From positions 124,001 to 188,000 of IMG/VR virus record IMGVR_UViG_3300044646_001937: 64,000 nt of DNA. One strand, written 5' to 3'. Shown in pieces: positions 1-46,200 of this stretch (position 1 is the first letter of the stretch; each line of letters opens with the position of its first letter). The notes beneath the pieces are model-generated. The model saw only the letters and a program-made list of their open reading frames with translations. It did no database searches and was not told where the DNA came from. The translations under genes were made by a program, and so were the position numbers.

Positions 1-2
1 GC

Positions 3-1232
3 GGGTATGGCTCCAAGCAATTTGCAAGAGCGCTAATGCCTCTACAGGTAGTAGAGGCAGACTGCGAAACAATGAACGGTATCAGTGTTTCTGTAGACGA
101 CAAAGAATCAGCAGGGTCCTATCTAGCCAAAGGAGTGTTAGACTATAATAGGAATAACGAAGTGACATTAAAAATGCTCAACGATCTTAGAAATAAGAAA
201 GTTGAGAAGATTGTTATTCGTACACCCATGACATGTCAGTCTAACAAAAAACATCACTCAGGTGGTTTGTGTCAGATGTGTGTAGGTAAAAGAGAAAAGG
301 GAATGGCAGCAATGGACAGCTATGTAGGTCTGGTGGCAGGTACGGCTGTAGCGGAACCATTAACAGAAAGCGCGATGAAGGCCAGACATTCAGGAGGCGC
401 AGCCACGTCACTAGGAGGACAATCAGGCTTTAAGCTAATCAATCAGCTGGCCAACGTACCTAAGACATTTGTAGGCAGAGCCCCCCTAGCTCAAGAGGAC
501 GGATTTGTTACTAAAGTAGAGAAAGCTGACGCTGGAGGTTACTTTATAACCGTGAATAATGAAGAGCATTATATTGGGATTGATCAGGAACCTAAAGTAC
601 AGCAAGGAGACAGAGTAGAACAGGGACAGGTATTAAGTACAGGTCTTGTAGATCCTAGAGAGGTTGTAAAATATAGAGGAATTGGAGACGGGCGTAAGTA
701 TTATATGGAGGCAATGAAGAAAGCATTCGACGACAGCAGTCTTCCTGTAAATCGCAGAAATTTTGAGCTGATTGCGAAAGCTGCTGTAGATCATGTCAAA
801 ATCACAGACCCCGAAGGTATAGGTAATTATCTTCCAGATCAGGTGGTGTCATACTCAGCTATTGAGAAAGACTATAACCCCAGAAGTAACTCTAAGATGC
901 TTAGGATAGATATGGCCTATGGTAAATATATGGAGAAACCTGAGCTTCACTACACCATTGGCACCAGAGTTACCTCCGCCGTAATCAGAGATCTCAAAGA
1001 ACATGAGATTGAATCTGTACTGGTTAACGATCAACCCCCCAACTTTGAACCAGTAATGGTACGTCTGGTGGACGTACCAGAGCATCATGAAGACTGGATG
1101 CATGTATTAAACAGCACCAACCTCGCAAAAAGGTTTGTAAATATGGTCAACAGAGGATCTACATCAGACACAAAAGGCCCTAGCCCTATACCTGGGTTAG
1201 CTATGGGTGTTGGGTTTGGACAGAAAGATTAA
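3..1232 (+). CDS. rpoC: Phage multisubunit RNA polymerase beta-prime-like subunit, C-terminal part (5' end outside the window)
   Basis: The frame is open from position 3 (GYGSKQFARALMPLQVVEADCET, cf. bridge-helix end SGYLTRRLVDV..V.E.DCGT). It has the Zn site IRTPMTC..GLCQMCVG, the trigger loop VGLVAGTAVAEPLTESAMKARHSGGAA (cf. [27 protein letters not shown]), the jaw-like KVQQGDRVEQGQVLSTG, and RNFELIAKA (cf. KHIEVIVRQ). Confidence 0.9.
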   Translation, partial: GYGSKQFARALMPLQVVEADCETMNGISVSVDDKESAGSYLAKGVLDYNRNNEVTLKMLNDLRNKKVEKIVIRTPMTCQSNKKHHSGGLCQMCVGKREKGMAAMDSYVGLVAGTAVAEPLTESAMKARHSGGAATSLGGQSGFKLINQLANVPKTFVGRAPLAQEDGFVTKVEKADAGGYFITVNNEEHYIGIDQEPKVQQGDRVEQGQVLSTGLVDPREVVKYRGIGDGRKYYMEAMKKAFDDSSLPVNRRNFELIAKAAVDHVKITDPEGIGNYLPDQVVSYSAIEKDYNPRSNSKMLRIDMAYGKYMEKPELHYTIGTRVTSAVIRDLKEHEIESVLVNDQPPNFEPVMVRLVDVPEHHEDWMHVLNSTNLAKRFVNMVNRGSTSDTKGPSPIPGLAMGVGFGQKD

Positions 1233-1255
1233 CCTGTTACGGAACAAGAAGGTTC

Positions 1256-1284
1256 TTGATATACAAGTAGAAAGTTTATAAAAT
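1256..1284 (+). promoter_or_regulatory. sigma70-type promoter TTGATA-N17-TAAAAT
   Basis: Near-consensus -35 and -10 hexamers with a 17-nt spacer, in the intergenic gap before 1310. Confidence 0.65.
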
Positions 1285-1309
1285 TGATTTAAATCTAAGA
1301 TAATTTACT

Positions 1310-3520
1310 ATGCGCAAAACAACTCTTAAAAAACAGGCAGCAGACGACCAGATCGAGGGAGCCTTTTTCCAGCTTGCCTACCAAAGACTGCAAGATACTC
1401 TTAAAAATCTTATTCCTTATCTTGTAGGATTTGAAATTGTTAAGAAAAACCCAGAGAATACAAAAGCCCTGGGCGTCTTTGGGTTTAGGTCAAAAAATGG
1501 ACAGATTTTGTTTGTACCTGCCTTTTTCATTAATGGTAAAGTAAAGAACCTGGATTTGCTTTATAGTAAGAACAATGAACAGTTCTACCCCCTAAACGAA
1601 GATTTTGCAGAAATGTTCATTAAAGATGAACTTTTGGGGTTGGGTGAAAACTCTAACGAAAACAGGACTTCAGTCATGCGCGATGCCTCCCAGGGAGACT
1701 ATCGTCAGATGGCTATTCCTCCCAGAACAGGTAGATATGCTATCGCCTCTGTTTTGGATTATGTGGAAAACTCAGATAACAAGACCAAGAAAGCTTTCAC
1801 AGAGCTTATTGAAAAAGACGCTGAGTTCTGTGAGTCACTGCTGAGATTTTACCCTCTTGAGAAAGTAGCAAAAGCTATTGCCCTTGAAGATGGTAAAGAG
1901 TATCGCAAATCAGACCAGGCCGCAAAGAAGATCGAACTGGTTAAGATGAAGGATAAGGAAAAGGTTAAAAAGTTAAACGATTCTCAAAAGTCCACCCTCA
2001 TGACCCAGGGATATGTAATCGTTGACGATAGAGACGCTGGTGAAAAATCCAGCTTTGGCGCTGTAGACTACCTCAAGAAGTTCATCAACCCTGTAGACTC
2101 TGGGTTCTATTCTTACGTAACCAAGATTGGTGGAATTCGCTACGGACTAGTTCTTGTACGCCCTAAGCAGCTTCAACAGGATTTCGCCACAGACGACGTA
2201 TTGGTTATTGACCTTGATTCTAAGGACGGAACTACCTACATAAAAGATCACAAGCAGGTCTTCGTTAAAGATCAGATCAAGGTACAGGACTATTCTACTG
2301 TGCACAAGATGATGGTGGACACTTCTGAAGGAAAGCCAGGATATTCTAATGTCTACGTTTTAATTAATGAAAATCTAAAAGCTACACAGCCATTTAGAAT
2401 TAACGCAAATTTCAAAGACGCTTCAGGCATTCGCAGGATTGCAGTAGAGCCGCACAGCATATGGACAGATTCCTGCTGTGACGAAAAGGGAGGCAAAAAA
2501 GACAGACCTGGTAGCATTCATGATTTACCTAGAGGCAATTTCTATAATCACCCAAAGAAAGCCAGAGAAGTGCATCTCGTCATGACCAAGAGACAGGGTG
2601 ATCGCCTAGACTATCAGGACAACACGATCTATGTTCCTGCAGGATTTAAATTACTAAAGATCTCCCCAGCATGCTGCTTCCCTGGATGGAGGGAGACAGG
2701 TTTCTCTGGTAATGAAAATGACGGAGACGCCAAGGCACACGAACAGAAAATTAAAGGCGAACCAGGAACTCCAGGCAAACTTCACGCTATGCTGGAAGAT
2801 AAGAACATCTTCCCAATGAGTGTTCATACTAACGGTAGCGAATACTTCGTAGACATCAATGGGGCGAAGAAGAAGTATGATGACGCAATCTCTGCAAAGA
2901 TTGCTATGGTGATGGACATTGGTCTTGATGAAAAAGTAGCCGTTGAGTTGATTGATAGCCTTGTGGAAGGCTTCTCCAAGAAAGGGCATATCAAGATGGC
3001 GTTTACAGGGGACATGTATCCAGCACCATTTGAAGAGCAGCCATACACCAATGAGTTTGGACAGCCTACAAGCGTTGGTGTTGGACAGGAAAACACACTA
3101 GCAGGCATGGATAGCTATGTAGGCAACCCTACACAGCAGGATCTCGGAACAAAAGCAGAAGTACAGGGAATTGACCCAAGATTTGTCCAGAACGCTATTC
3201 AGCTCGCTCAGACAGGCCAAAAAGAAATTTTTGACACGCACATGATTGGAGCTCTTGCAAAGTATGTGAGCGTTACCGATAAGGTTTCTGAATATGTCCC
3301 CTCTATGGTTGAAGCCATGGATAGGCTGGGAAGAATTCTATTCCTACTTCATTGGGAGACTGACAAGTTTAAAGAAATGTATGGTCGAGGAGATCTGCCT
3401 GAGCTTGTTGAATTGGTTACGAGCGTGTTCAAGAACCTTGGTGAACTTACAGTTTTCTTGAAGCGTAAATCTCCAGAGTTATCAATCAACATGAGTAAAG
3501 CTGACGGCCTAGACTTATAA
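1310..3520 (+). CDS. Large hypothetical head-module protein (736 aa)
   Basis: Long ORF and first gene of the head cluster. N-terminal LKKQAADD carries the K-x-A motif. No family recognised. Confidence 0.6.
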   Translation: MRKTTLKKQAADDQIEGAFFQLAYQRLQDTLKNLIPYLVGFEIVKKNPENTKALGVFGFRSKNGQILFVPAFFINGKVKNLDLLYSKNNEQFYPLNEDFAEMFIKDELLGLGENSNENRTSVMRDASQGDYRQMAIPPRTGRYAIASVLDYVENSDNKTKKAFTELIEKDAEFCESLLRFYPLEKVAKAIALEDGKEYRKSDQAAKKIELVKMKDKEKVKKLNDSQKSTLMTQGYVIVDDRDAGEKSSFGAVDYLKKFINPVDSGFYSYVTKIGGIRYGLVLVRPKQLQQDFATDDVLVIDLDSKDGTTYIKDHKQVFVKDQIKVQDYSTVHKMMVDTSEGKPGYSNVYVLINENLKATQPFRINANFKDASGIRRIAVEPHSIWTDSCCDEKGGKKDRPGSIHDLPRGNFYNHPKKAREVHLVMTKRQGDRLDYQDNTIYVPAGFKLLKISPACCFPGWRETGFSGNENDGDAKAHEQKIKGEPGTPGKLHAMLEDKNIFPMSVHTNGSEYFVDINGAKKKYDDAISAKIAMVMDIGLDEKVAVELIDSLVEGFSKKGHIKMAFTGDMYPAPFEEQPYTNEFGQPTSVGVGQENTLAGMDSYVGNPTQQDLGTKAEVQGIDPRFVQNAIQLAQTGQKEIFDTHMIGALAKYVSVTDKVSEYVPSMVEAMDRLGRILFLLHWETDKFKEMYGRGDLPELVELVTSVFKNLGELTVFLKRKSPELSINMSKADGLDL

Positions 3521-3537
3521 TCATTGAAAAATGCTAT

Positions 3538-4584
3538 ATGTCATTAGAGCCTCAGCAGAATCCTCAGGTTGAGGATACATCTTTTAAAGACAGACTGCTA
3601 GCGATGAAAATGCTTCGCGAGAACATGTTTCTCGCAGAGCCTGAAAGGTATGGCATGGCTGATGTTGCCGAGGATTTGCCAGGCTCATTAAGACCATTAG
3701 GAGACATTGTAAAAAATGTTCTACCGTCCAGAATGATCATATCTGAGGATCCTGCTCAAAGGAAAAAACAGATAGATGCAGCAATTCAAAGAATAAAAGA
3801 AACAAGGCAAGGAGGCAAAGACCTTGGAAAGGAAATGCTGAGTAGTGCAGGCAGCATGGGGATGCATAGTATCCTTCCCAGTTTTGCGTTTGCAGCTATA
3901 GCCAGACTAATGGGTGGCGGAGGTGGGCTTTCCAGACTACACAGATTGAGAGCATCTGGAAGGAGAGCATTATCAGGCACAGCCGCACAAAGAGCAATGC
4001 ACGGCAAGTCCCAGTTACCCAGCCTAAGCCCAACACCAGACAACTATAATAATAGCCTTAAAAGATTTCTACCTTCTTTTACAGGATTAAAAAGATTAGG
4101 AACGCACTGGAAGCCTTCTTTAAAACATGTCGCAAACGATACATTAACAAATGCAGTCATGGCGGCAACTACAGGAGCGGCAGTACCGTTACTCAGTAGA
4201 TATTCAAATGTTTCTGACGCCGCCCTAGAGCAGGCTAGAAAGATAATGGAAGAGCAGCCTTATATTACAAGTCTACCTACAAATGAAATGCTCAGTGTCA
4301 TCAAAGGCGAGAAAGACAACAGAGGAGACAACAAGGCAAGAAACTTTTTACTAGGAGGTTTGGTTGGTGCTGGCTCTGGAGCTGTAGGAGGAGCTGTACC
4401 TAGTTTATTTAGCGGTGGTGGAGCAGTACTTAAAAGTCTCGTTAAAGGCAAACCCTTATTGTCAGGGATTGATCGAAGAATGACTAGCAAGATGCTTGGC
4501 AACGTCAGAAACTCCGCAATGTTTGGAGGAGCTATCGGGGCCCTCACAGGCCCAGAAGTAGCCATGATGGGTGAAAACGAATAA
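3538..4584 (+). CDS. Glycine-zipper hydrophobic protein, putative internal virion/ejection protein
   Basis: Gly/Ala-rich hydrophobic segments (FLLGGLVGAGSGAVGGAVP, AMFGGAIGALTG). Lies in the head module. Confidence 0.45.
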   Translation: MSLEPQQNPQVEDTSFKDRLLAMKMLRENMFLAEPERYGMADVAEDLPGSLRPLGDIVKNVLPSRMIISEDPAQRKKQIDAAIQRIKETRQGGKDLGKEMLSSAGSMGMHSILPSFAFAAIARLMGGGGGLSRLHRLRASGRRALSGTAAQRAMHGKSQLPSLSPTPDNYNNSLKRFLPSFTGLKRLGTHWKPSLKHVANDTLTNAVMAATTGAAVPLLSRYSNVSDAALEQARKIMEEQPYITSLPTNEMLSVIKGEKDNRGDNKARNFLLGGLVGAGSGAVGGAVPSLFSGGGAVLKSLVKGKPLLSGIDRRMTSKMLGNVRNSAMFGGAIGALTGPEVAMMGENE

Positions 4585-4585
4585 T

Positions 4586-5677
4586 ATGCGCTCCAAGGCA
4601 CTCACTCCGATTAGATTTAACCAGATAGGCTCGTTTTATAACTTTCCTAATTGGAGATATCTTATTTATCTAGAACCTAGCAGAGCCAACTTAGCATACT
4701 GCAAAAGAAAGCCAAAAGATGGAGCTGGCTGTCTCTTAAGATACCTGAAAGAGCATGACGACATCTCAGATCGTTCTGTTGTCTCTTTTTCGTTAACCCC
4801 ATTCATATCCAGAAGCATCACCAAGCTGAGCTATTCAGAAAAAACAGCTTTCTATAAACTGTTTAATAAAAAACTTAAACTGCAAGGAGATAAGAAAATA
4901 TACACACCTACCTACAAGGAAGAACATGTAGAGGTTTGGAGCGCAAAATACATATCGCTAATTACTGACGAGCCTCTCAGGAATTTCTTATATCATGTAG
5001 CAAAGATTAAATACAATCATGATTACGACTTTGCGGTAAAGTTTAGAAACTCTGCAGAACATCAGCGCAACTTCTGCGTCATAGGTTATTGTATATTTGC
5101 CGGATTATCTGATGCAGTCATAGCCCATAGATACAAGCTTTTCCCAGGGCAGATACGAGCAATACGAGAATTGTTTTTTGATTTTAAAAACGCTCCAACA
5201 GATGTAGTAGCTAGGGCAGCATATTTTACACAACTTACAGACAATCAAATTATCAGTGATGTCGACAGAAGGTATTTTAAAATCATTGGCTCTCTTGGTG
5301 AGCTAGGATTAAAAGCAGACGCAGACCCATCAAGCCTGACCATAGAAGAAAAAGATAGGTTGAATAGCTATCTTGCCGATACAATGGTGGACAATGTGAC
5401 TTCCTTATATTTCAGTATTGAAGATAAGAAAGATGCACTAGCCTACAATACGGTTATTAACAACCTGGCCTCCTTCTTTATCAAGAAGGAAGAAATTAAT
5501 TATTACAGAGCCAAAGTTAGACATCTTGACGCCAGCACTACCAGGATTGTTAATGAACGCTCAGATTATGACACAAGTATGCAGGAAGAGGACAGATTGG
5601 CGATAGAAATGATCTCTCAGCTGGCTTTAAAGGAAAATCCTGCCCCTGAATATAAAGTAATTACTGAATTGAAATAA
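4586..5677 (+). CDS. Hypothetical protein, possible helix-turn-helix
   Basis: The likely start is the ATG at 4586 (TAA-T-ATG coupling) rather than the GTG at 4571. GLSDAVIAHRYKLFPGQIRAIRELFFD resembles an HTH. Confidence 0.5.
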   Translation: MRSKALTPIRFNQIGSFYNFPNWRYLIYLEPSRANLAYCKRKPKDGAGCLLRYLKEHDDISDRSVVSFSLTPFISRSITKLSYSEKTAFYKLFNKKLKLQGDKKIYTPTYKEEHVEVWSAKYISLITDEPLRNFLYHVAKIKYNHDYDFAVKFRNSAEHQRNFCVIGYCIFAGLSDAVIAHRYKLFPGQIRAIRELFFDFKNAPTDVVARAAYFTQLTDNQIISDVDRRYFKIIGSLGELGLKADADPSSLTIEEKDRLNSYLADTMVDNVTSLYFSIEDKKDALAYNTVINNLASFFIKKEEINYYRAKVRHLDASTTRIVNERSDYDTSMQEEDRLAIEMISQLALKENPAPEYKVITELK

Positions 5678-5697
5678 TCTAAAAATCATGCTATAAC
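5669..5697 (+). promoter_or_regulatory. sigma70-type promoter TTGAAA-N17-TATAAC with extended TG
   Basis: 17-nt spacer, TGc-TATAAC, 13 nt upstream of the ATG at 5711. Confidence 0.65.
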
Positions 5698-5710
5698 TGT
5701 AAACAATCAT

Positions 5711-7222
5711 ATGGACGAGCCAAACATTCTCATTAAATCAGCATTATCCGAAGCAGTTCAAAAGATCAACGGAGGCATGTCCCCTACGGCAGCTCTCAAG
5801 AAAGTTGCGTCTGATTTTGATCTAAACCCCAATTACATTCAGAGAACAGGGGAAGCTTTAAATGTGGCGCTGCATTATAAGCATTTCAAGACAGCCTCCG
5901 ATAGATCTGACGAATTTGAAATTGCAGACATCCCCAAGGCTATTGAAGAAGTTTTTACAGTGAATGAGAAGACCGCTTCAGAATATATCACTGAAACTTT
6001 TGGAAACAATGACGCTAATGAGACGGTGTTTAACTATAACCGCGCACTGTCCAACCCAATCTATAAGCGAGCATTTCTTGAGGTGGTAGGAGCTACGGAA
6101 ACAAATGATTCTTACCCTACCACGTTTAAGACAGTGTATGAAAAGTCTGCAAATTATATCAGCAAACTTGAAAAGTCGGCAGAGGCAGCGGAAGTTGCTA
6201 AGGTTGCAGCAGAGATTGAGTTAAACGACACCTTTTCCACATTGTCAGATTCTTTCAGGAAAGATGCATCCTACAGATCTACGTTTGAAGAATTTGAGTC
6301 ACAAGTATTTGCTAAACACGGAGAAGCAGCTGTTCCCTATATTGATCTACTACATAAAACAGCTTGTCCTAATGATGAGCGTGGAGTGCATGATGATAAA
6401 TACATGATGTTTTCGCAGAGCAAAGAGGCTCAGTTATTTGACCGCCTAATGACCGCAGCCGCTACACTTGTAGAGGCAGAAAAAACAGCAGAAATTAATG
6501 CTGAAAATCTGGCTTACGAAAAAGCCTTTTTAAAAGAGTGTCACCAAATGCTAGGCAAGCAAGCAGAAGAGGAGAAAGAAGAAGCCTCTGAAAAAGATGA
6601 AGTTGAGGAAAAGGGCGAGACTGAAGAGAAAGGCGAAGCGGAAGAAAAAGAGGAAGAAGACCCGGTTTTAGAACAGATTAAAAAAAAAGTCTTAAATCCT
6701 GACGAGAAACAGGCAGCAGCTCTTTCAGAAGATCCTGTCCTTGAACAGGCTATGGAAAAAGACGCTTTTTTAGGTGGGGCTATAAGGGCAGGTGCAGGAT
6801 TGTTAAATACTAGAAGCTTTGGAAAAATGCTGGCCGGCCCGCTAGCGGAGCTTGTAGGAGATCCTGTGACCGAAGCGTTCCATCACAACTTTAAATCTCC
6901 AGCAAAGGCAGTTAAGCCTAACCTTACACTGGATAATATGGAGCGTAGACTTTTATTGCAGGAGCTGATGCTTACTGACCCTATCCTGTCCAAGGTCAAC
7001 CCAGCAAAAGTAGCCAGAGCCTTTGAACAGCTTTTAAGATTATCGCCAGAAATATCCAAACAGAAAGAGGTAGTCAGGGCAGAATTGCGAGCAATGGTTT
7101 CCAGTCAGGCGCTTAGCAAGTTTGATGCGGACTTGCTAGCCAAGACAGATTTGGGTATGCTTAAAAGAAGAGTTGCTACCCAGCAATATAATATGGGAAT
7201 GTCCGATAACTTTAGAATGTAA
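5711..7222 (+). CDS. Putative prohead core/internal protein, K-x-A rich, with acidic tract
   Basis: 16 K-x-A motifs, an EK-rich acidic tract, a duplicated EDPVLEQ, and a C-terminal domain starting FLGGAIRAGAGLL. Confidence 0.55.
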   Translation: MDEPNILIKSALSEAVQKINGGMSPTAALKKVASDFDLNPNYIQRTGEALNVALHYKHFKTASDRSDEFEIADIPKAIEEVFTVNEKTASEYITETFGNNDANETVFNYNRALSNPIYKRAFLEVVGATETNDSYPTTFKTVYEKSANYISKLEKSAEAAEVAKVAAEIELNDTFSTLSDSFRKDASYRSTFEEFESQVFAKHGEAAVPYIDLLHKTACPNDERGVHDDKYMMFSQSKEAQLFDRLMTAAATLVEAEKTAEINAENLAYEKAFLKECHQMLGKQAEEEKEEASEKDEVEEKGETEEKGEAEEKEEEDPVLEQIKKKVLNPDEKQAAALSEDPVLEQAMEKDAFLGGAIRAGAGLLNTRSFGKMLAGPLAELVGDPVTEAFHHNFKSPAKAVKPNLTLDNMERRLLLQELMLTDPILSKVNPAKVARAFEQLLRLSPEISKQKEVVRAELRAMVSSQALSKFDADLLAKTDLGMLKRRVATQQYNMGMSDNFRM

Positions 7223-9186: not shown

Positions 9187-10629
9187 ATGTACAAGGGTCT
9201 AATTAAATTCAGCTCTACAGACGATTGGAATTGGGATGTCGATCCTGTTCAATTAATTCATAATGTAAATACACTCACAAAAGCAGGAGCAGATAACTCT
9301 GAGCTTAAGACAGAAAAGACAGCTGGGCAGACGGATGCTCTGGTAATTGCCCTTGGAGCTTACGAGGGTACAGGCGCAAACAGAAATGGAGATATTTTTA
9401 AAGAAGCAGAATGTTTAAAACATTACAAAACATTCATTAAATCAGGCAGTCGCAAGTCTGATGGATCATATGATGGAAGAGCTTTAAACAGACATCATAA
9501 GAACAAACCAACAGATCCTAAATACGGCAACATCAAAGCTGCGACGTACAATAATAAGATGAAGCGTATTGAGTTGGTTATTGGACTAGACAACGACAAG
9601 TGCGCAGAAGAAATTCAAAAGCTAGCAGAAGGAAAGCAGATCAATGTGAGCATGGCTGCCAAGGTTGCATATGATAAGTGCACATGGTGTGGACATGACG
9701 CTAAAACAGACAGCGATAGATGTAAGCACATCCCTAAAGATCTTGGTGAGATTAATAAGCGCGGAGAGATGTGTAGCATGGATAATATAGATCCTAAATG
9801 GTTCGAACTTTCTATTGTAGGAAGACCTGCAGACCGTATAGGTATGTCGCTAAAACTTGCTTCAGATAATAACTATATCAAGACAGCAAATGATTATAGA
9901 GACCTGTATCCAGGGTTTACAATTCCTGAAGAAGATAACACATTTCTAAACATCTCAAAATACGCAGATGAAAAAAGAAGCCTTGTCAAGAAACTCGCTG
10001 CAATTGAAAAGCATATTGACGGTGTGATGAAGTCTACGCCAGCAAACTCGAAAGATAAATACCTTAAAGAGCAGCGCTCTAAACTAAGCGAAGCAGATGG
10101 CATATCTGATGACACTATTGAGGAGCTTAGAAAGTTCGAACCATCAAAACTTTTAAAAGCACTAGCAGATCATGGCATTGTCTTCTCTCCAGAAGATTTC
10201 GTTAAATACTTATTTGGAGCAAAAGCTCTAGGGGCTAAGTCAGAAGATATGTTTAGTAAAATCAAGAAGCGCCTACCTTCGATGTTTTCAGACATGGACG
10301 AGTCAGGTGATGATGAAATGAACGATGATAAGTACGAACCTTCTGTGTCTGATATTATGCCTAAAGGTTTACTGAATATGGTCAAAGGACTTTTCGATGA
10401 TCATTCGCTATTTGACAAACCTTCCCATAATCGAATTATGAGAATTACTATTGTAAAAAAATCTCCAAAAGCTAGACTAGCTTTGAAAGAAGAGAATACA
10501 AAAGAGGCTGCAGTAGATGAATTATCTAGGCAATACAGTATATATAAATTGGCTGCATTACGCTATATCAACAGTCAAAACAAGCTAGATGAAGACACAA
10601 TCTTTAATGCTTTGATGCAAAACAGATAA
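9187..10629 (+). CDS. Prohead (capsid maturation) serine protease, HK97/assemblin-type fold, with Zn-finger insertion and C-terminal extension
   Basis: Motifs NRNGDIF, RHHKN (candidate catalytic His), VSMA (candidate catalytic Ser), CTWCGH..CKH, and FELSIVGRPAD (cf. L.EVS.V..PA of HK97-type proteases). Lies upstream of the scaffold and capsid genes. Confidence 0.8.
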   Translation: MYKGLIKFSSTDDWNWDVDPVQLIHNVNTLTKAGADNSELKTEKTAGQTDALVIALGAYEGTGANRNGDIFKEAECLKHYKTFIKSGSRKSDGSYDGRALNRHHKNKPTDPKYGNIKAATYNNKMKRIELVIGLDNDKCAEEIQKLAEGKQINVSMAAKVAYDKCTWCGHDAKTDSDRCKHIPKDLGEINKRGEMCSMDNIDPKWFELSIVGRPADRIGMSLKLASDNNYIKTANDYRDLYPGFTIPEEDNTFLNISKYADEKRSLVKKLAAIEKHIDGVMKSTPANSKDKYLKEQRSKLSEADGISDDTIEELRKFEPSKLLKALADHGIVFSPEDFVKYLFGAKALGAKSEDMFSKIKKRLPSMFSDMDESGDDEMNDDKYEPSVSDIMPKGLLNMVKGLFDDHSLFDKPSHNRIMRITIVKKSPKARLALKEENTKEAAVDELSRQYSIYKLAALRYINSQNKLDEDTIFNALMQNR

Positions 10630-14425: not shown

Positions 14426-15385
14426 ATGGAAAAAATCGCAAATCAAAGAGTGTTCAACGATACGTTCGTTGAAATGGTTAAAGCTGGCGAAGAAAAGAAG
14501 GCAGCAGTGTCTGCACAGTCTTTCACTCGCAACAAGCTTCGTGAAGAAAGCTTCACGGAAAAGATCATCACCCCTATCGACATCAGCAATGATGACCTCG
14601 ACAAGGCTGAGAATCCTGAGCTTCTTGTTAAGTGGAATGATCGTGAGCCTGATACTGCGCCTGCAGTGACAATCCCATTGGGTGTTGTTCCTGACATGTT
14701 CCAGTTCTCTGGTACTCGTTATCCTTCCTACTTCACTCGTATTACGAGTCCGAAGTTCAACAAGGACATCGACCAGCTCCGTAGCTATGATTACGACATC
14801 CGCGCAATCATGCTTGAGTTGAGCACCAAGGACATTGCAACCGAAATCGACACACGCTTTATGCAGCGCGTGGACAGCATCATCGGTCCAGTCAACGCAG
14901 CCAACACTCTCAACGGCATTGGGCTTCCACAGAATGTCACCATCAGCGGTGGTATTACTCGTGAAAACGTCGCAGAAGCATTCAAGGTCATTCAGCGCCT
15001 GAAGGTTCCATTTGGTCCCTCCCAGCCTGATGGCGGCGAAAGCAAGGGCGTTATGCTCATGAACAACGTCACTGCACAGGACTTCGTTAAGATGAGCCGC
15101 AGTGAAGTTGGTGGTGATCTTGCACAGGAAATGTGGGTGAATGGTCTCCCATCCAAGACTCTCTTGGGTGTTAAGCCGATCTACACAATCAAGCGTGACC
15201 TCGTCAAGGATGGCGAAATCTACTTGTTCTCTTCCGAAGAATTCTTCGGTAAGTACTACAGATTGCAGCCATTGACTGTGTTCATGAAGAACGAAGCATA
15301 CTTCTTGGAGTACTTCCAGTACATGAACCTCTCACTCGCAATCGGTAACGTGAAGGGTGTTGTGAAGGTCAGCTTCAACGCTTAA
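14426..15385 (+). CDS. Major capsid protein (HK97 fold)
   Basis: 319 aa. Strong C-ending codon bias (TTC, AAC, ATC, GAC) typical of a highly expressed gene. Spine-helix-like LSTKDIATEIDTRFM and C-terminal LAIGNVKGVVKV. Follows the protease and scaffold genes and is followed by a strong terminator. Confidence 0.85.
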   Translation: MEKIANQRVFNDTFVEMVKAGEEKKAAVSAQSFTRNKLREESFTEKIITPIDISNDDLDKAENPELLVKWNDREPDTAPAVTIPLGVVPDMFQFSGTRYPSYFTRITSPKFNKDIDQLRSYDYDIRAIMLELSTKDIATEIDTRFMQRVDSIIGPVNAANTLNGIGLPQNVTISGGITRENVAEAFKVIQRLKVPFGPSQPDGGESKGVMLMNNVTAQDFVKMSRSEVGGDLAQEMWVNGLPSKTLLGVKPIYTIKRDLVKDGEIYLFSSEEFFGKYYRLQPLTVFMKNEAYFLEYFQYMNLSLAIGNVKGVVKVSFNA

Positions 15386-31746: not shown

Positions 31747-32379
31747 ATGAATGACGTAGAACAGATGATTAAGGACAACAAGAAGTTGATTGAACTGGAA
31801 GTGAGTAGATATGCTACTAACCTACCGAAGATAACTGTACAGCTAGAAGCCTATAAGCTAGCCAGAGAGGCAGCCAAAACATATAGCCCCGCCTCTGGAT
31901 TTAAATTTAGCACGCATCTAGTGAACAGTCTTAAAAAACTATCAAGACTTTCCACGCAATATGGTAACGTAGTGAGAATTCCTGAGAATACTCAGTTTGG
32001 TATAAATAAACTGCAGAAACTTGAAAAGGATCTGGAGCACACTCTAGGTAGAGCACCAACCACAGATGAGCTAAGCCATCACTCAGGAATGTCCATGAAC
32101 GCTATAGTTAATACGCTAGGCAGCAAAAAGATAAGCTCAGGTATATCCTCTCTTTTTGAAAGCCCTACACTGTTTGACAGTAACAATGACGAATGGGTGC
32201 ATTTCGTATATCACGATCTGAGCGACAAAGATAAATTAATTTTTGAACATAAGACAGGATTTGGTGGAAAGCCTGTGATGGACAATTCGTCACTGGCCAA
32301 GAAATTAAATTTGTCTACCAGTACTTTAAGTAATAGAATTAAGATGATAAATAATACATTAGCGAAAGGATGGAAATAA
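31747..32379 (+). CDS. Phage sigma70-family sigma factor (regions 2, 3 and 4)
   Basis: YSPASGFKFSTH (cf. FDPERGFKFSTY). Region 3: VRIP..INKL..LEHTLGRAPTTDELS. Region 4 HTH: LSDKDKLIF..LAKKLNLSTSTLSNRI. Confidence 0.85.
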   Translation: MNDVEQMIKDNKKLIELEVSRYATNLPKITVQLEAYKLAREAAKTYSPASGFKFSTHLVNSLKKLSRLSTQYGNVVRIPENTQFGINKLQKLEKDLEHTLGRAPTTDELSHHSGMSMNAIVNTLGSKKISSGISSLFESPTLFDSNNDEWVHFVYHDLSDKDKLIFEHKTGFGGKPVMDNSSLAKKLNLSTSTLSNRIKMINNTLAKGWK

Positions 32380-40263: not shown

Positions 40264-43200
40264 ATGGCAGCGCTGGAGTACCTAACGCAGAATAGTCTAA
40301 CATCACATCCTTTTAAAAATTCTTATGGGCTTGAAGAGGGGACAGGTGCTGTCGACGGTTGGTTTTACGACATTCTATTTGTTTCGTATGACGACTCTAT
40401 TCGTAGAGTATACCTCCAAAAAATAGAAAAAAAGGAAAACGGCAGTTTAGAGATAGGGATCAATAACGCTGAAACGCTAGCTAGGCTGCCTGAGGGTCTA
40501 ATAACTATAGCCGCTGAAGATGTTGTAGATCATTATGCCAATAAAATAAAAAGTTTTGTAGGCGTAGCCAAATCAAAGTTTGCTATTAAGTTTGTGATTG
40601 GTCCAACTTTGGCGGCTAAAGAAGCTTTTTCAGAAAATTACCTACCTGCAGTAACCGAACTTTCAAGCGATGTAACAGTATTAAACACTGTCAGGGTGAA
40701 TTCTATTACATTTGAGGCTTATGACGGACCAATTTTAAACACTGTAAAGCTATATACTGGAGAAGAAATAGCCCTAGTCGAGCCCAGATATAATTCAACA
40801 TTTACACTAACAGACACAAGCTCCGGCGAGTTGAGTGTCTCCGCAGGTAGCGGCGCTGGACTGTATGACAATTGTCCAACCCCAGGAAGTATAACCGATG
40901 TTCATACTTTAAATGAAATACCACCAAACTCAGAAGGAACTTTATTTCTACATGCCACAGAGTGTCATTCATTAAATTTATTAACAACTAATGACGAACT
41001 TATATATGGTGATCAATTAGACACCTACAGATCATTTACTTCACCTGGTAATACAGAACCGTTCAATGCAGTTAATCCAGAACACACTATAACTTTAGAG
41101 AATTTTTGCAGCGTTAAGTGTCCCCATGAAAACGTAAAAGCTTTAGCGTATTATATTAATCGTATAACTGACGGAGCTTCTGGACTAGCTGACATAGCGG
41201 TTAGAAATACAGAAACTAGAGGTATAGGTAGTGCTGAAGGAACAGAATTTCATGTAGATAATGCAGATTTCTGTGATGCTGCTGCGAACATATTCTTAAA
41301 ATGCCCTGTAGATAGTGAAGCATTCATTCCATGCAATCAGGGTTTTATTAAATATTTGCACGAAGGACGCACATTGCAGGTGTCCTACGATAACGCCACA
41401 ATTACAAATTACACAATTGTTTCTGTGATTAATGAGAATACTGTATTACTAGACGGCGCTCCGTCTGGAATAATGGGCAAAATCCCATTTAGGGTAATTG
41501 ATAGTGGTGTTATAAGTAATATCAATTGCGCTAGCAGTCTTTATAACAAACAAAATGACGATAAATTAAAACCATACTTTAAAGTAAGATACAGTACCAG
41601 TGAAGCATTCAATTCGGATTTTGAGTATGTCACATACGCAGCAATATCTGTAGGTGTATTTAATCCAGGTCCAGAACCTGTGCGACTCAATATAGCCTTT
41701 AATCCAAATGGACTAGGACAACAAGGCAGTTTTAAAATAAGAAAAACAGATTCAATCTACGTTTCCAGCGAAAGTGTAGTTGACTTAGATTGTAAAGAGC
41801 ACGCATTTGTAGAAGCAGTCTACTATATCAAGTGCGGAGAACCTGCCAGCAATTTTAGTATATTGGTAACAAACATTACAGCCAACCCAGATGAGATATT
41901 AGGAGATGGAGCATATTACCTACCTCCGTTAGTTGGTGTGAGTTGTCCAGGAGACATAGCCGGAGCAATAAACACCGTGCAAATTGTAAAGCAAGACACG
42001 GACACATTTAGCCAAATCATTGGCGTTGATCCGTTAGTTCAAGATGTTAAAATTTATGGAACACTTCCTGATTGGTTGACTATAACATTTCAGCCAGCAC
42101 AATCAGGACAGCCCAGCTCTTCACTAGTGCTTACAGGTACAAAAATATCTACAAATAATTATAATACGGAATATAATTTGTATGCAAGATACACAGGCAT
42201 TGCAATACCTGTGGTATCGCAGCTAGTTATTCAGTATGTGGCTCCGCCCATATTTATATATCCTACAGAGAAGTATTTTACTCAGGAAAAACCTCTAGTT
42301 ATTGACCCGCTCATAATTTATACCGAAGAAAATCCACTAACGCAGCTTACTGTGAAAAACATGGATAAGCCGCTTAGCTGGAACGGTGACAATTTTAGTT
42401 CTTATGGAGTTGACGTAATTGCTGAACGCGAGCTACCTCAGGGACTAACGCTAGACACGGTTACAGGAAAAATAACAGGAAGGTTGTTAGAGGGGGTAAC
42501 GGACGAAGGATACTGGAAAATAGCTTTAACAGCTACAAATCCTGCAGGTATAGTTTCTCAAAATCTTTATCTGGGGGTATCCAAAAGAGCCATCCCTGTA
42601 ATTTCTTTTTTACAGCAGTTACCTACAGTCATAGATAACTACACCCAATATACGATTGAGGAGCCTTTGTGTTCGTTTAAAGCCACAAATGATCCTATCC
42701 TTCTATATCAGACGACAGATAAATTACCGTCAGGACTTAGACTGGACACCACCAAAGGCGTTATATATGGCAAGATTACTGAAACAGCAGCAGGAACCAA
42801 AACAATCAATGTTTACGCTAGGAATTTTTATGGAAAATCCATACTTCCGCTAGAAGTAACGATCTCATATACCATATATAAACAACCAGAAATTCAAGCG
42901 CCTACACAGTTTGCAAGATTTAATGGTGAGGACGGCTCCACACTAGAAGAGCCACTATGTACAATAGTTGCAACACAAGCCTATGGAGGGCTTAATAATT
43001 TTGATCCGCTACTTACAGACGCCACACGCAATCATTACACAGCCACAAATCTACCTCCTGGTTTTTCAGTAGATCTTTATACCGGTAAAGTCTATGGAAT
43101 CCTAGATACTTCTGAAGGTTTTTCAAGAGCCTATGCGGTAACATTAAAAGCCTCTAATCTAGTTAATACCGCAACTGTACAAATTTACATTACATTTCCA

Positions 43201-46200
43201 AATGTAAAATTGCCTGTAATTACAAATTTGGCGAGTGGTAGTTTGTTTAAAGTTACTAGGAACCTAGAGTATTCCGTAGAAGCTGGCCCACTGGCGTCAA
43301 TATATGCGATCTATTTAGACCCTATAATTATCGCCACAGGTTTACCTGCAGGATTAACCTGCCTACCTACCGGAGAAGTAGTAGGTATGGTAGACTCTTT
43401 GCTACCCGCCGGAGATTATACCGTTTCATTTAGGGCACAAAATAGATATGGAGTATCCACCCCAGCTATTGTATGTATCGTACGAGTGGGGATTGAGCTA
43501 CTTAGCCCACTACCTAACTCAATGTTAAACTTATCTGTGAATGCACAGATTACACCAATACAAATTACAACAAGCCAGGGTGTGCCAGTAACACTTACAG
43601 TCAGGAATTTACCGGCAGGGCTAACATTTAATAATTCACAAATATACGGCACACCGGTTACAGTCGGCAGATCTAAAATATACATAACCGCGTCGGCTGG
43701 AGTCTTCGGTATAATAAAAGCCGTCATAAACGTATCCGTGTCAATTCCCACATATAGTCTTTCAGGTGCAGTTGTGGGTGTCGACTTAGCAGCGGCAACA
43801 AATGTTTTTTTAACCATAACCAGTGTAGAAACTGGCGCTATATACACAATAAAAACTACAAGCACGGGCACATACCAACTTAATGGGCTGTATGCAGGGA
43901 TATACAACGTATCCGCCCGTAAGGATCGATTTGAAATAGAGCCAATCACAAGAACAATTACAATTGTAAATACGGATGTTGCATTGCAGAGTTTTTTAAT
44001 TACAGGACCATACAGACTTATAGTCGGTACAGTAACCAACGCAATTAATAAAAGCGGTGTAGAGAACGTGGCGATAATTACATTTAATAGGACTGTGTAC
44101 ACAGATACAGCAGGCAGGTTTTTTATAAATTTATTACAGAACGAAGAAATCACAATTACTGCGGATGCTGTTTCTTATGTGTTTAATCCAAAAACAATAG
44201 ATATACCGATTAGTAATGAAGACTCAGGAGGTTATTCGTTTAAAGCCACTCCCTCGCACAATATTTCAGGAACTATAGTTTCTAAAAACATTGAAGTTCC
44301 TGCAAATATTGGAGTTCTGATAGACAATCAGAACACTGGAGAAAAATATTACGATATAGCACCTGCAGGCAGCATTTCAGTGCAGGCACTTGACGGAAAA
44401 TACAAAATATATCCTAACCCTGAAGCATCAGATTATTATAATAGTATATGGCAATTTAAGCCAAAGTATATACCTGTAGAGGTGAATGGTCTGTCGATTC
44501 AACTAGCGAAATCGTTTAACATATTTTCAGGTAAAACAATATCAGGAAGAGTTATTGCTCCGATATATGAAACAGAAATTGGTCTACCTATTCCTGTTGC
44601 TGGTGTGGCGATTACTGCCGCAAATATTACTCTAGATCAGACAAGGTTTATTTGGCTGAAGTTGGATGCAAACAATCCACCGACTATAAAGCTAGATCTA
44701 AAAACAATTAGAGCTGCCGCAGCATCCACTGAAAACATTCCTGTGACGGTTGATTTTACAACAGGATTTTTTAATCTAAGAGGTACAACAGCAGGACAGC
44801 TTTCAATGGATGGATACACTGCGTCAGTAGAAGAAATAATTCTTCTGAAAGATCAATTTTATCCTGAGTTAAACGGAATATATACAATTGTAAACCCAGG
44901 CTCTGCAACAGAGACGTTCCATCTCGTCAGAAGTACTGAAGCAAACTACAATGAATCTTTAAAAGTTGGTGCAGCAATATATGTAATTGGAGGCATCACA
45001 AACAGCGCTGCTACATATTATTTAACTACTGAAGATCAAGTTACAGCAATTTCAGATATAGATGGAAATTTCACACTGACAAACGTCTACCCAGACACTT
45101 ACAACCTATACGCTCATAAAGAAGGTGTTGGTATATTAAGTATTCCTCAAGTCAACGTATCCACGAATAATGCAACCAATCTAGTAATCGTGCCTAATAC
45201 ATATCAAATCACTGGCACGATACAGTATAGAGCGAATTATTTAAGCACGACGAAGACTCCGCTGACAGATGTTCGCATCAGTCTTTATAGAGCAAAAGAT
45301 TTATTCTTACTTAAAAAAAGCGAGAAATCAAAAGCAGACGGCTCATGGATATTTAGATCTGTACCTGACGGAGACTATATATTGAAAGCTGAATTTAGAG
45401 GAATGACACCTACAGTAGTTGAACAAAAAATTACTGTAGATGATGGCGATGTTAATCTGGTTGCCATGGAAGTGTATATAGCTGTTTTTACAGCACCATC
45501 CGCACCTATAGTAAATAACATACAGGGTGGTTATAGGTCACTAAAGGTGACAGTGAGCGAAAACCCAGAAGACATAGGTACAGAAATCCGCTATTACGAA
45601 TATTCGCTAGACTCAGGCACAACATGGGCAACTGCAGTGAAAACTTCAGACAGCGAGATATTGATCCCCGATCTCCCTCCAGCAGAAAAAACTATCTTTA
45701 AATTAAGAGCCAGAAACTTATGGTCGTATGGACCTGAGGTTGAGCTGCAGGGTGTTGCATTTGACCGCCCTGGCGCACCTACAATTACAAGTATAGCGCG
45801 CAAAAATAAAGAGCTGTTGGTAAATTTTTCACCACCACTATTTTCAGGCGGGCTATACATAGACAACTATGCATATTCCACAGACGGAGGTATCACTTTT
45901 TTACCTATTACTCCAGCAAACATAACTGGCTCATTTAGTATACTTAAAAGATCAAATAATGGGTTGGATTTGGTGAATGGTGAAAAATATCAAATAGTCC
46001 TTCACGCGCTAGCTGGAGAAGCTGCAGGTTTAGACTCAGAGCCGGAAATAACATTCCCTGTAGGTACTCCTGGACCGTCGAGACTTCTGAGTGTTGTCGG
46101 CGGAAGATTGAATGAGCTAGATATAAGCTTTGAACCTCCAGAAATAACCAATGGTGCACCTGTGGCAGATTATGCATATTCTTTAAATGGAGGTCCATTT

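What the first reader, a model, noticed from the sequence alone, without database searches (positions are those of the whole stretch)
3..1232. Phage-encoded RNAP beta-prime with a rewired trigger loop, placed directly before the head genes
Seen: bacterial-type beta-prime motifs (Zn site, trigger helices, jaw) are present. The trigger loop reads EPLTESAMKARH against the bacterial [12 protein letters not shown], so the His and Met are kept but Gln becomes Glu and Phe becomes Arg. Known: phiKZ- and AR9-like jumbo phages encode multisubunit RNAPs, including virion-packaged ones. Inference: adjacency to the head module fits a virion-packaged enzyme, and the substitutions may change NTP selection or inhibitor sensitivity.
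Basis: partly seen in the sequence, partly recalled or inferred. Interest (0 to 1): 0.62.

Follow-up and report, generated by a model that had tools for sequence, protein, structure and literature searches.

The report
Split phage RNA polymerase, altered active site
The stretch encodes the back half of the largest subunit of a bacterial-type RNA polymerase carried by a 204-kb freshwater phage; three residues that cellular polymerases use to tell RNA building blocks from DNA ones are replaced in it, and it may travel inside the virus particle.

Summary
Window 3-1232 is the last 409 codons of a 616-aa gene that starts 618 bases upstream of the window. The protein is the C-terminal half of an RNA polymerase beta-prime subunit, with bridge helix, four-Cys zinc site, trigger loop and jaw. 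The trigger loop reads EPLTESAMKARH (window 354-389).

The window lies in a complete 204,454-bp phage genome.
- a 1001-aa fusion of the beta C-terminal half and the beta-prime N-terminal half;
- two small genes for the beta N-terminal part;
- one sigma-like factor.

Only one polymerase set was found. It is not phiKZ- or AR9-like. Its nearest isolates are Vibrio phage D69 and Salmonella phage Arash, and it lies outside the bacterial rpoC clade.

The Phe-to-Arg/Lys change occurs across the whole clade. The Gln-to-Glu change is limited to the close subclade. The partner protein adds more: the catalytic loop reads GGDSDGD instead of NADFDGD, and Arg425 is Lys. All three sugar-selecting residues are therefore changed.

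Virion packaging is plausible. Arash's homologues were among the strongest signals in particle mass spectrometry, and the link to virion genes is conserved. It is not shown for this phage.

The parts
3..1232 (+). Last 409 codons plus stop of the beta-prime C-terminal gene. The full gene is 616 aa at genome 123382-125232 and starts 618 bases before the window; the protein is P0001.
   Evidence: ORF list and translation. Pfam Rpb1_5, with weaker Rpb1_3 and Rpb1_4. PDB phmmer E 1e-35 to Thermus beta-prime. Foldseek.
63..281 (+). Second zinc site of beta-prime: Cys228, Cys285, Cys297 and Cys300 at window 63-65, 234-236, 270-272 and 279-281.
   Evidence: Translation. Aligned to the Thermus Cys cluster. 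Invariant in 26 relatives.
354..389 (+). Trigger-loop motif EPLTESAMKARH (residues 325-336). Met932 and His936 equivalents are kept. Gln929 is Glu, Arg933 is Lys, Phe935 is Arg.
   Evidence: Translation. HMMER alignment to Thermus. Family counts.
1310..3520 (+). 736-aa gene directly downstream; homologue of Arash gp218, which was detected in virions. The adjacency to the beta-prime C-terminal gene is conserved.
   Evidence: blastp/tblastn to Arash gp218 and the D69 0266 region. The same order is seen in 19 related IMG/VR contigs.
9187..10629 (+). 480-aa head-maturation-protease-like gene; homologue of Arash gp222.
   Evidence: phrog_18299 at E 2.4e-9. blastp to Arash gp222 at E 3e-28.
14426..15385 (+). 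Major capsid protein, 319 aa.
   Evidence: blastp to Arash gp226, annotated as major capsid protein, E 1.5e-31.
31747..32379 (+). 210-aa sigma-70-family factor; the likely initiation factor of the phage polymerase. It lies among baseplate genes.
   Evidence: phrog_351 at E 2e-11. Pfam Sigma70_r3 at 30 bits, above the cut-off. Homologue of Arash gp10. It is the only sigma hit in the genome.

Best explanation
The ORF encodes the C-terminal half of beta-prime (funnel, bridge helix, second zinc site, trigger loop, jaw) of a phage-encoded, bacterial-type two-barrel RNA polymerase.

Shown: the enzyme is encoded in four pieces.
- Beta N-terminal piece 1: 218 aa, genome 109692-110348, minus strand.
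- Beta N-terminal piece 2: 230 aa, genome 101825-102517, plus strand.
- A fusion of the beta C-terminal half and the beta-prime N-terminal half: 1001 aa, genome 118825-121830.
- This protein.

Shown: the three catalytic Asp, the two beta Lys, the bridge helix and the trigger-loop Met and His are kept. The enzyme is therefore most likely active.

Inferred: it uses the phage's own sigma-family factor for initiation.

Inferred: it is made late together with virion proteins, packaged, and injected to start transcription without the host polymerase. This rests on conserved gene order and on mass spectrometry of the distant relative Arash.

Shown: the sugar-selecting residues of cellular polymerases are all replaced. 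Arg425 is Lys, Asn458 is Gly and Gln929 is Glu. Arg933 is Lys and Phe935 is Arg as well.

Inferred from E. coli mutant data: the pocket that distinguishes NTPs from 2'-dNTPs works differently, probably with weaker discrimination.

The confidence given is for the whole statement. Identity as an active phage polymerase subunit is near certain. Packaging is about even odds or a little better. Altered sugar selection is about one in three.
For: Identity.

Phage origin: the window is part of a 204,454-bp IMG/VR record with terminal repeats, rated 100% complete. Terminase, portal, capsid and baseplate genes are present.

Partners:
- Pfam Rpb2_6 (E 1.7e-46), Rpb1_1 and Rpb1_2 all hit one 1001-aa protein.
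- Arash gp206 (1525 aa) maps in three parts onto the 218-aa, 230-aa and 1001-aa proteins.
- The 230-aa piece hits Pfam Rpb2_3 above its cut-off.

Single set.

Active site:
- The catalytic loop reads GYGGDSDGDQ, and GDK and GAKG are present in the beta part.
- It aligns with E. coli, Arash, D69 and RP13.
- The pattern is the same in 14 related contigs.
- His336 is invariant in 26 relatives.

Constraint: more than 200 homologues share the same motifs. In relatives, inteins sit exactly at the trigger-loop His and in the bridge helix.

Sigma.

Packaging: in Arash, gp206 gave the most spectra of all proteins, gp216 was in the top five, and sigma gp10 was also detected. The beta-prime C-terminal gene is followed by the gp218-like virion gene in this family, in Arash and in D69.

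Sugar selection: in E. coli, R425K lowers discrimination against 2'-dGTP about 17-fold at binding and 25-fold at incorporation. Q929M lowers it 30-fold at binding and N458S 4-fold (PMC7862312).
Against: - No data from particles of this phage exist.
- The Arash proteome listed 116 of 252 proteins, including ribonucleotide reductases and a kinase. Carry-over from lysate is therefore real, and the authors say so themselves.
- With one polymerase set, the enzyme must also serve after injection, or the host enzyme must take part.
- Promoter-like TGGTATAAT elements that a host sigma-70 holoenzyme could read occur in the genome.
- The effect of the substitutions is extrapolated from single E. coli mutants. 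Glu was never tested at position 929, and compensating changes are possible.
- No alpha or omega homologue was looked for.
- RNA-library contigs were too sparse to show expression or co-transcription.
Confidence: 0.6

Rival explanations
1. It is the same active phage polymerase but is not packaged. It is made after infection and transcribes middle and late genes. Host polymerase reads the early genes, possibly from the TGGTATAAT-type promoters.
For: The Arash particle proteome is contaminated with metabolic enzymes, and its authors offer carry-over as an alternative. About nine extended -10-like elements lie outside the structural block. The genome has only one polymerase set.
Against: In Arash the two polymerase subunits gave 128 and 40 unique peptides, against 11 for ribonucleotide reductase. 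Sigma was detected as well. The polymerase genes lie within or beside virion gene blocks in three lineages that share only about 28-30% identity.
Confidence: 0.3
2. It is a phiKZ- or AR9-type jumbo-phage polymerase subunit, virion or non-virion.
For: The genome is over 200 kb. Beta-prime is split into N- and C-terminal halves. PHROG families of phage polymerase subunits match weakly.
Against: There is one set, not two. A sigma factor is present, whereas reviews report none in phiKZ-type phages (PMC7824862). The profile E-value is 5e-15 for a phiKZ-like subunit (Klebsiella phage N1M2) and 6e-12 for an AR9-like one, against 1e-46 to 1e-53 for bacteria. tblastn with the whole protein found no phiKZ-like phage at E 1e-5 or better.
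Confidence: 0.03
3. It is a recently captured or mis-assembled host rpoC fragment with no role of its own.
For: The best solved-structure matches are bacterial beta-prime. Several relatives sit in bins labelled as bacteria.
Against: Identity to bacterial beta-prime is only about 24%. Bacteria form their own clade with 99/99 support, excluding the family. The split-and-fused architecture is conserved in phage contigs of 130-226 kb. The 'bacterial' bins hold their own ordinary rpoC elsewhere.
Confidence: 0.02
4. It is a catalytically dead polymerase relic kept as a structural or DNA-binding virion protein.
For: The otherwise invariant NADFDGD reads GGDSDGD. Arg425, Gln929, Arg933 and Phe935 are all replaced.
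Against: The three Asp, both beta Lys, the trigger-loop His and Met, the bridge helix and the zinc site are kept across relatives of 45-100% identity. In relatives, inteins sit at the trigger loop and bridge helix.
Confidence: 0.03

Closest known systems
RNA polymerase of Salmonella phage Arash (gp206 + gp216; PMC10585845) and of Vibrio phages D69, D181 and D148
   Same: These are the nearest isolates: 27-30% identity and profile E 1e-96 to 1e-106. Shared features are a C-terminal beta-prime protein of about 610 aa encoded on its own, the beta-prime N-terminal half fused behind beta, a Lys or Arg before the trigger-loop His, Asn458 lost, no N-terminal zinc ribbon, a gp218-like virion gene downstream, and a gp10-like sigma.
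   Different: In Arash and D69 the whole of beta is in the fusion (1525 and 1527 aa). Here the beta N-terminal part is two separate small genes on different strands, 8.5 and 16 kb upstream of the fusion gene. Arash keeps Arg425 and Gln929; this phage has Lys and Glu. The portal gene is next to the polymerase in Arash but about 75 kb away here. No analysis of architecture or active site appears in the Arash paper.
mReC, the multisubunit-RNAP-encoding Caudovirales (Weinheimer & Aylward 2020, PMC7481178)
   Same: Tailed phages, some over 200 kb, from aquatic metagenomes. They carry beta and beta-prime that are recognisably similar to cellular ones yet lie outside the cellular clades.
   Different: That study kept only beta-prime hits of at least 800 aa carrying NADxDGD. 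This family has a split beta-prime and reads GGDSDGD, so it fails both filters. Isolates with the canonical motif (RP13) or a bacterial-like trigger loop (Carin-5) fall on the other side of the tree.
phiKZ and AR9 virion and non-virion polymerases
   Same: Phage-encoded two-barrel polymerases with split subunits. One of the two sets is packaged and injected.
   Different: Those phages have two paralogous sets, no sigma homologue and far more divergent sequences.
Cyanobacterial and chloroplast rpoC1/rpoC2 split; Helicobacter-type rpoB-rpoC fusion (the fusion is recalled, not tested here)
   Same: Cyanobacterial rpoC2 chains align from about their residue 11 to residue 24 of this protein. The beta-prime split is therefore at nearly the same point. 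Beta joined head-to-tail to beta-prime is known in some bacteria.
   Different: Here the split and the fusion occur together, the beta N-terminal part is further cut into two, and there is no trigger-loop insertion.

Membership tests
Multisubunit (two-barrel) RNA polymerase, beta-prime subunit | Sequence match to the Rpb1 domain models and to solved beta-prime chains | tested here: met
   Pfam Rpb1_5 at 52.7 bits, above the 28.5 cut-off. PDB phmmer E 1e-35. Foldseek E 9e-22.
Multisubunit (two-barrel) RNA polymerase, beta-prime subunit | Bridge helix, and a trigger loop with the catalytic His and the base-stacking Met | tested here: met
   Alignment to Thermus. His336 is invariant in 26 relatives. 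The model has a helix at 183-218 and helices flanking the loop.
Multisubunit (two-barrel) RNA polymerase, beta-prime subunit | The strict NADFDGD motif in the Mg-binding loop | tested here: not met
   The partner protein reads GGDSDGD. The three Asp are kept, Asn is Gly and Phe is Ser. The catalytic triad itself is met.
Multisubunit (two-barrel) RNA polymerase, beta-prime subunit | A beta partner with the second barrel and its two Lys, in the same genome | tested here: met
   Rpb2_6 at E 1.7e-46 in the 1001-aa fusion. GDK and GAKG are present.
mReC clade (PMC7481178) | Beta-prime hit of at least 800 aa carrying NADxDGD (the study's inclusion filter) | tested here: not met
   Beta-prime is split between the 1001-aa fusion and the 616-aa protein, and the motif reads GGDSDGD.
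mReC clade (PMC7481178) | Capsid and terminase clustering with mReC members | not tested
   No mReC reference sequences were on hand.
phiKZ/AR9-type jumbo-phage polymerases | Two paralogous sets (virion and non-virion) | tested here: not met
   Each Pfam and PHROG polymerase model hits a single locus.
phiKZ/AR9-type jumbo-phage polymerases | No sigma-family factor in the genome | tested here: not met
   A sigma-like gene lies at window 31747-32379.
phiKZ/AR9-type jumbo-phage polymerases | Closest sequence relatives are phiKZ/AR9 subunits | tested here: not met
   Profile E 5e-15 and 6e-12, against 1e-46 to 1e-53 for bacteria. Tree.
Arash/D69-like phage polymerase | Beta-prime N-terminal half fused behind beta, a separate C-terminal beta-prime protein of about 610 aa, a basic residue before the trigger-loop His, and Asn458 lost | tested here: met
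Arash/D69-like phage polymerase | Subunits present in purified virions | not testable with these tools
   Known only for Arash, from a broad particle proteome.

The most novel reading that the evidence does not exclude
A widespread freshwater jumbo-phage lineage runs its whole transcription programme with one injected, sigma-dependent polymerase. That polymerase is built from four polypeptides. Its sugar-selection triad (Arg425, Asn458, Gln929) has been replaced by Lys, Gly and Glu. The enzyme therefore either discriminates poorly against 2'-dNTPs or selects ribose by a mechanism not seen in cellular polymerases.
Probability: 0.2. Interest if true: 0.75.

Novelty: new variant of a known kind. 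Interest (0 to 1): 0.55.

Why it matters
NADFDGD and Arg425 are treated as invariant in cellular RNA polymerases, and Arg425 is the main experimentally defined gate against 2'-dNTPs. A natural, abundant enzyme family carries Lys, Gly and Glu at the three sugar-contacting positions while keeping the catalytic residues. Inteins in some relatives mark the same sites. The family is thus a ready-made test of how sugar selection can be built differently.

The family also widens the known range of phage polymerases:
- it resembles the bacterial enzyme in sequence;
- it has a sigma factor;
- it combines a split and a fusion of subunits;
- it probably escaped the one systematic survey, whose filters required a long beta-prime with NADxDGD.

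If the enzyme is packaged, it would be a second, independent solution to host-independent early transcription, beside phiKZ-type and N4-type virion polymerases.

Tried and rejected
- Megablast of window 1-6000 against isolated phages found no match.
- I tested whether the three same-frame ORFs (fusion, 296-aa ORF, this gene) form one gene broken by an intron or intein. A tool line had given an open frame of 2146 aa. The frame holds many stops. No Rfam family, group I or II introns included, was found in the block. The two ORFs in between are conserved genes in relatives. Rejected.
- The genome search 'relatives' is not available for a virus record.
- The one genome-contig scan used family-specific patterns. 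It returned only phage relatives binned as bacteria, not a broad rpoC sample. I recovered three bacterial rpoC genes from those bins and one from E. coli. The bacterial sampling in the tree is therefore thin: four sequences from three phyla.
- The sigma-70 promoter and terminator scan of the polymerase block gave counts at chance level.
- RNA libraries, with 3,600 letters laid: only contigs of 150-313 bases. True metatranscriptomes touched only the downstream 736-aa gene, and none bridged the gene junction. This is no evidence for or against expression or co-transcription.
- The AF2 model of the isolated subunit is of modest quality (mean pLDDT 62; bridge helix and trigger loop below 50). I used it only for fold assignment.
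- The large representative search and complex prediction were not used. The protein was not left open by the family scans, and assembly follows from homology.
- One call failed on a mistyped reference and was repeated correctly.

Full report
**1. What is at the coordinates**

A frame that is open at its 5' end runs over window 3-1232. The window is bases 124001-188000 of a 204,454-bp IMG/VR virus record with a 127-bp terminal repeat, rated complete. In the genome the ORF starts at 123382 and encodes 616 aa, kept as P0001. Its ATG overlaps the stop of the preceding 136-aa ORF as TAATG.

The fragment matches Pfam RNA_pol_Rpb1_5. The whole protein also gives weaker hits to Rpb1_3 and Rpb1_4. The best PDB sequence matches are Thermus and other bacterial beta-prime chains at E 1e-35. 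The alignments cover the bridge helix, the four-Cys zinc site, the trigger loop and the jaw. An AF2 model has a mean pLDDT of 62, low in the bridge helix and trigger loop as expected for an isolated subunit. It finds the same chains over about 610 columns.

The trigger loop is at window 354-389 and reads EPLTESAMKARH, against [12 protein letters not shown] in bacteria.

**2. The rest of the enzyme**

Both are present.

- A 1001-aa protein (genome 118825-121830) matches Rpb2_6 at E 1.7e-46, and also Rpb1_1 and Rpb1_2. It is a fusion of the beta C-terminal half with the beta-prime N-terminal half.
- The 1525-aa gp206 of Salmonella phage Arash maps in three consecutive parts onto three proteins here. 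These are a 218-aa protein (109692-110348, minus strand), a 230-aa protein (101825-102517, plus strand, Pfam Rpb2_3) and the fusion.

The polymerase is therefore encoded in four pieces.

Cyanobacterial rpoC2 chains align from about their residue 11 to residue 24 of P0001. The beta-prime split is thus close to the cyanobacterial one.

Every Pfam and PHROG polymerase model hits one locus only, so there is a single set.

One sigma-70-family gene lies at window 31747-32379 among baseplate genes. It is homologous to Arash gp10.

**3. Relatives and placement**

More than 200 metagenomic homologues exist. Many lie on contigs of 130-226 kb, and some of those contigs are binned as bacteria. Runs that hold the sequence are mostly lake and other freshwater metagenomes, from 15 studies.

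The nearest isolates are Vibrio phages D69, D181 and D148 and Salmonella phage Arash, at 27-30% identity. A family profile scores as follows:

| Target | Profile E-value |
|---|---|
| Arash and D69 | 1e-96 to 1e-106 |
| Bacterial beta-prime | 1e-46 to 1e-53 |
| Other phage polymerases (RP13, Acinetobacter 3098, IME392, Carin-5, Rhizobium Y65) | 1e-29 to 3e-31 |
| A phiKZ-like subunit (Klebsiella phage N1M2) | 5e-15 |
| An AR9-like subunit (Staphylococcus phage Madawaska) | 6e-12 |

In a maximum-likelihood tree of 28 rows and 513 columns, the four bacterial sequences form a clade with 99/99 support that excludes the family. The branch that separates the family and Arash/D69 from bacteria plus the other phage polymerases has 85/93 support. 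Bacterial sampling is thin, so this rules out recent capture but does not date the origin.

**4. The active site**

The basic residue before the trigger-loop His (Phe935 in E. coli numbering) is found across the whole clade. It also occurs in RP13 and in Acinetobacter phage 3098. Carin-5 keeps Phe. Gln929 to Glu is limited to the subclade at 67% identity or more. More distant members, Arash and D69 keep Gln. His336 is invariant.

The larger departure is in the partner protein.
- The Mg loop reads GYGGDSDGDQ where E. coli has AYNADFDGDQ. The three Asp are kept, Asn458 is Gly and Phe461 is Ser.
- The LHR motif reads LSK, so Arg425 is Lys.
- The same pattern holds in 14 related contigs. Arash has AADYDGD with Arg kept, and D69 has Lys.
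- The N-terminal zinc ribbon of beta-prime is absent.

In E. coli, Arg425 is the main determinant of selection against 2'-dNTPs. R425K lowers selectivity about 17-fold at binding and 25-fold at incorporation. Q929M lowers it 30-fold at binding and N458S 4-fold (PMC7862312). All three positions are changed here.

It follows by inference only that sugar selection is relaxed or achieved differently.

The survey that defined mReC kept only beta-prime hits of at least 800 aa with NADxDGD. It would therefore have missed this family.

**5. Is the enzyme functional?**

The catalytic Asp triad, the two beta Lys, the bridge helix, the zinc site and the trigger-loop Met and His persist over relatives of 45-100% identity. 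In some relatives, inteins of about 385-397 aa sit right after the trigger-loop His (residue 336/337) and in the bridge helix (residue 211). Both facts argue for an active, essential enzyme.

**6. Is it packaged?**

Downstream, on the same strand, lie these genes:
- a homologue of Arash gp218 at window 1310-3520;
- a prohead-protease-like gene at window 9187-10629;
- the major capsid protein at window 14426-15385;
- further on, baseplate genes and giant tail-like proteins.

The order fusion, Q/P-rich ORF, 136-aa ORF, beta-prime C-terminal gene, 736-aa gene is conserved in the family. The beta-prime C-terminal gene is followed closely by the gp218-like gene in Arash and D69 too.

In Arash, particle mass spectrometry gave the most spectra for gp206 (3516, with 128 unique peptides). 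It gave 1210 spectra for gp216 and also detected sigma gp10. However, 116 of 252 proteins were reported, including ribonucleotide reductases, and the authors mention carry-over.

Packaging is therefore plausible, at perhaps even odds or a little better, and is unproven for this phage.

**7.

No other genetic code was used.

**8. Verdict**

The feature is real. The finding is a new variant of a known kind, the phage multisubunit polymerases. Its closest kin is the scarcely analysed Arash/D69 type. The most interesting aspect is not the trigger loop alone but the joint replacement of the whole sugar-selection triad, together with the four-piece split-and-fusion architecture.

Noticed in passing
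Relatives P0046, P0055 and P0105 (insert after residue 336/337 of P0001, window about 389/390); P0060, P0066, P0068 and P0104 (insert at residue 211, window about 12-14): Some relatives of about 1000 aa carry inteins (Pfam LAGLIDADG_3, Hom_end_hint, Hint). One site is exactly after the trigger-loop His; the other is inside the bridge helix (GGYG|S). This phage has neither.
   Followed up: partly
Outside the window: genome 109692-110348 (minus strand; L008:1692-2348) and 101825-102517 (plus strand; L010:1165-1857): The beta N-terminal part is encoded by two small separate genes on different strands, 8.5 and 16 kb upstream of the main polymerase (fusion) gene. In Arash and D69 the same segments are part of one 1525-aa protein.
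   Followed up: yes
Outside the window: L008:14071-14961 and L008:14972-15382 (genome 122071-122961 and 122972-123382): A 296-aa, extremely Gln/Pro/Ala-rich protein and an acidic 136-aa protein sit between the two large polymerase genes. Both are conserved in related contigs. The 136-aa ORF overlaps the start of the beta-prime C-terminal gene (TAATG), which suggests translational coupling. They may be accessory subunits. No family matched either.
   Followed up: partly
window 31747-32379: The only sigma-family gene of the genome lies among baseplate genes. Its Arash homologue gp10 sits among virion-detected genes and was itself found in particles.
   Followed up: partly
window 40264-46977, 47002-52323 and 52392-63242: Three consecutive giant ORFs of 2237, 1773 and 3616 aa. 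The first two carry Ig-like, fn3 and CarboxypepD_reg domains and hit minor-tail PHROGs. The 3616-aa protein matches no Pfam or PHROG family.
   Followed up: partly
Outside the window: genome 38876, 48649, 51106, 53392, 92778, 98504, 191269 and 191780 (all plus strand): A repeated promoter-like element, TGGTATA[A/G]TATATTGA (an extended -10 plus a conserved downstream part), lies upstream of small genes and is often preceded by a C-rich hairpin. No good copy (two mismatches or fewer) occurs in the polymerase and structural block; two three-mismatch matches lie at genome 186807 and 188282 on the minus strand. Which polymerase reads it is unknown.
   Followed up: partly
L027 (G001:C12, a 0.7-Mb bin labelled Gammaproteobacteria): This bin's own full-length rpoC has Lys at both the Arg425 and the Phe935 positions (LHK; [12 protein letters not shown]) while keeping NADFDGD. 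These substitutions are therefore not confined to phages.
   Followed up: no
L021 (226.5-kb contig, bin labelled Dependentiae); L023 (211-kb contig, bin labelled Sediminibacterium); G003 with three phage-type copies: Whole phage genomes of this family are filed inside bacterial metagenome bins in public genome collections.
   Followed up: partly
window 1256-1284: The best sigma-70-like match of the block (TTGATA, 17 bases, TAAAAT; 10 of 12) lies in the 77-base gap between the beta-prime C-terminal gene and the next gene. Overall counts in the block are at chance level.
   Followed up: no
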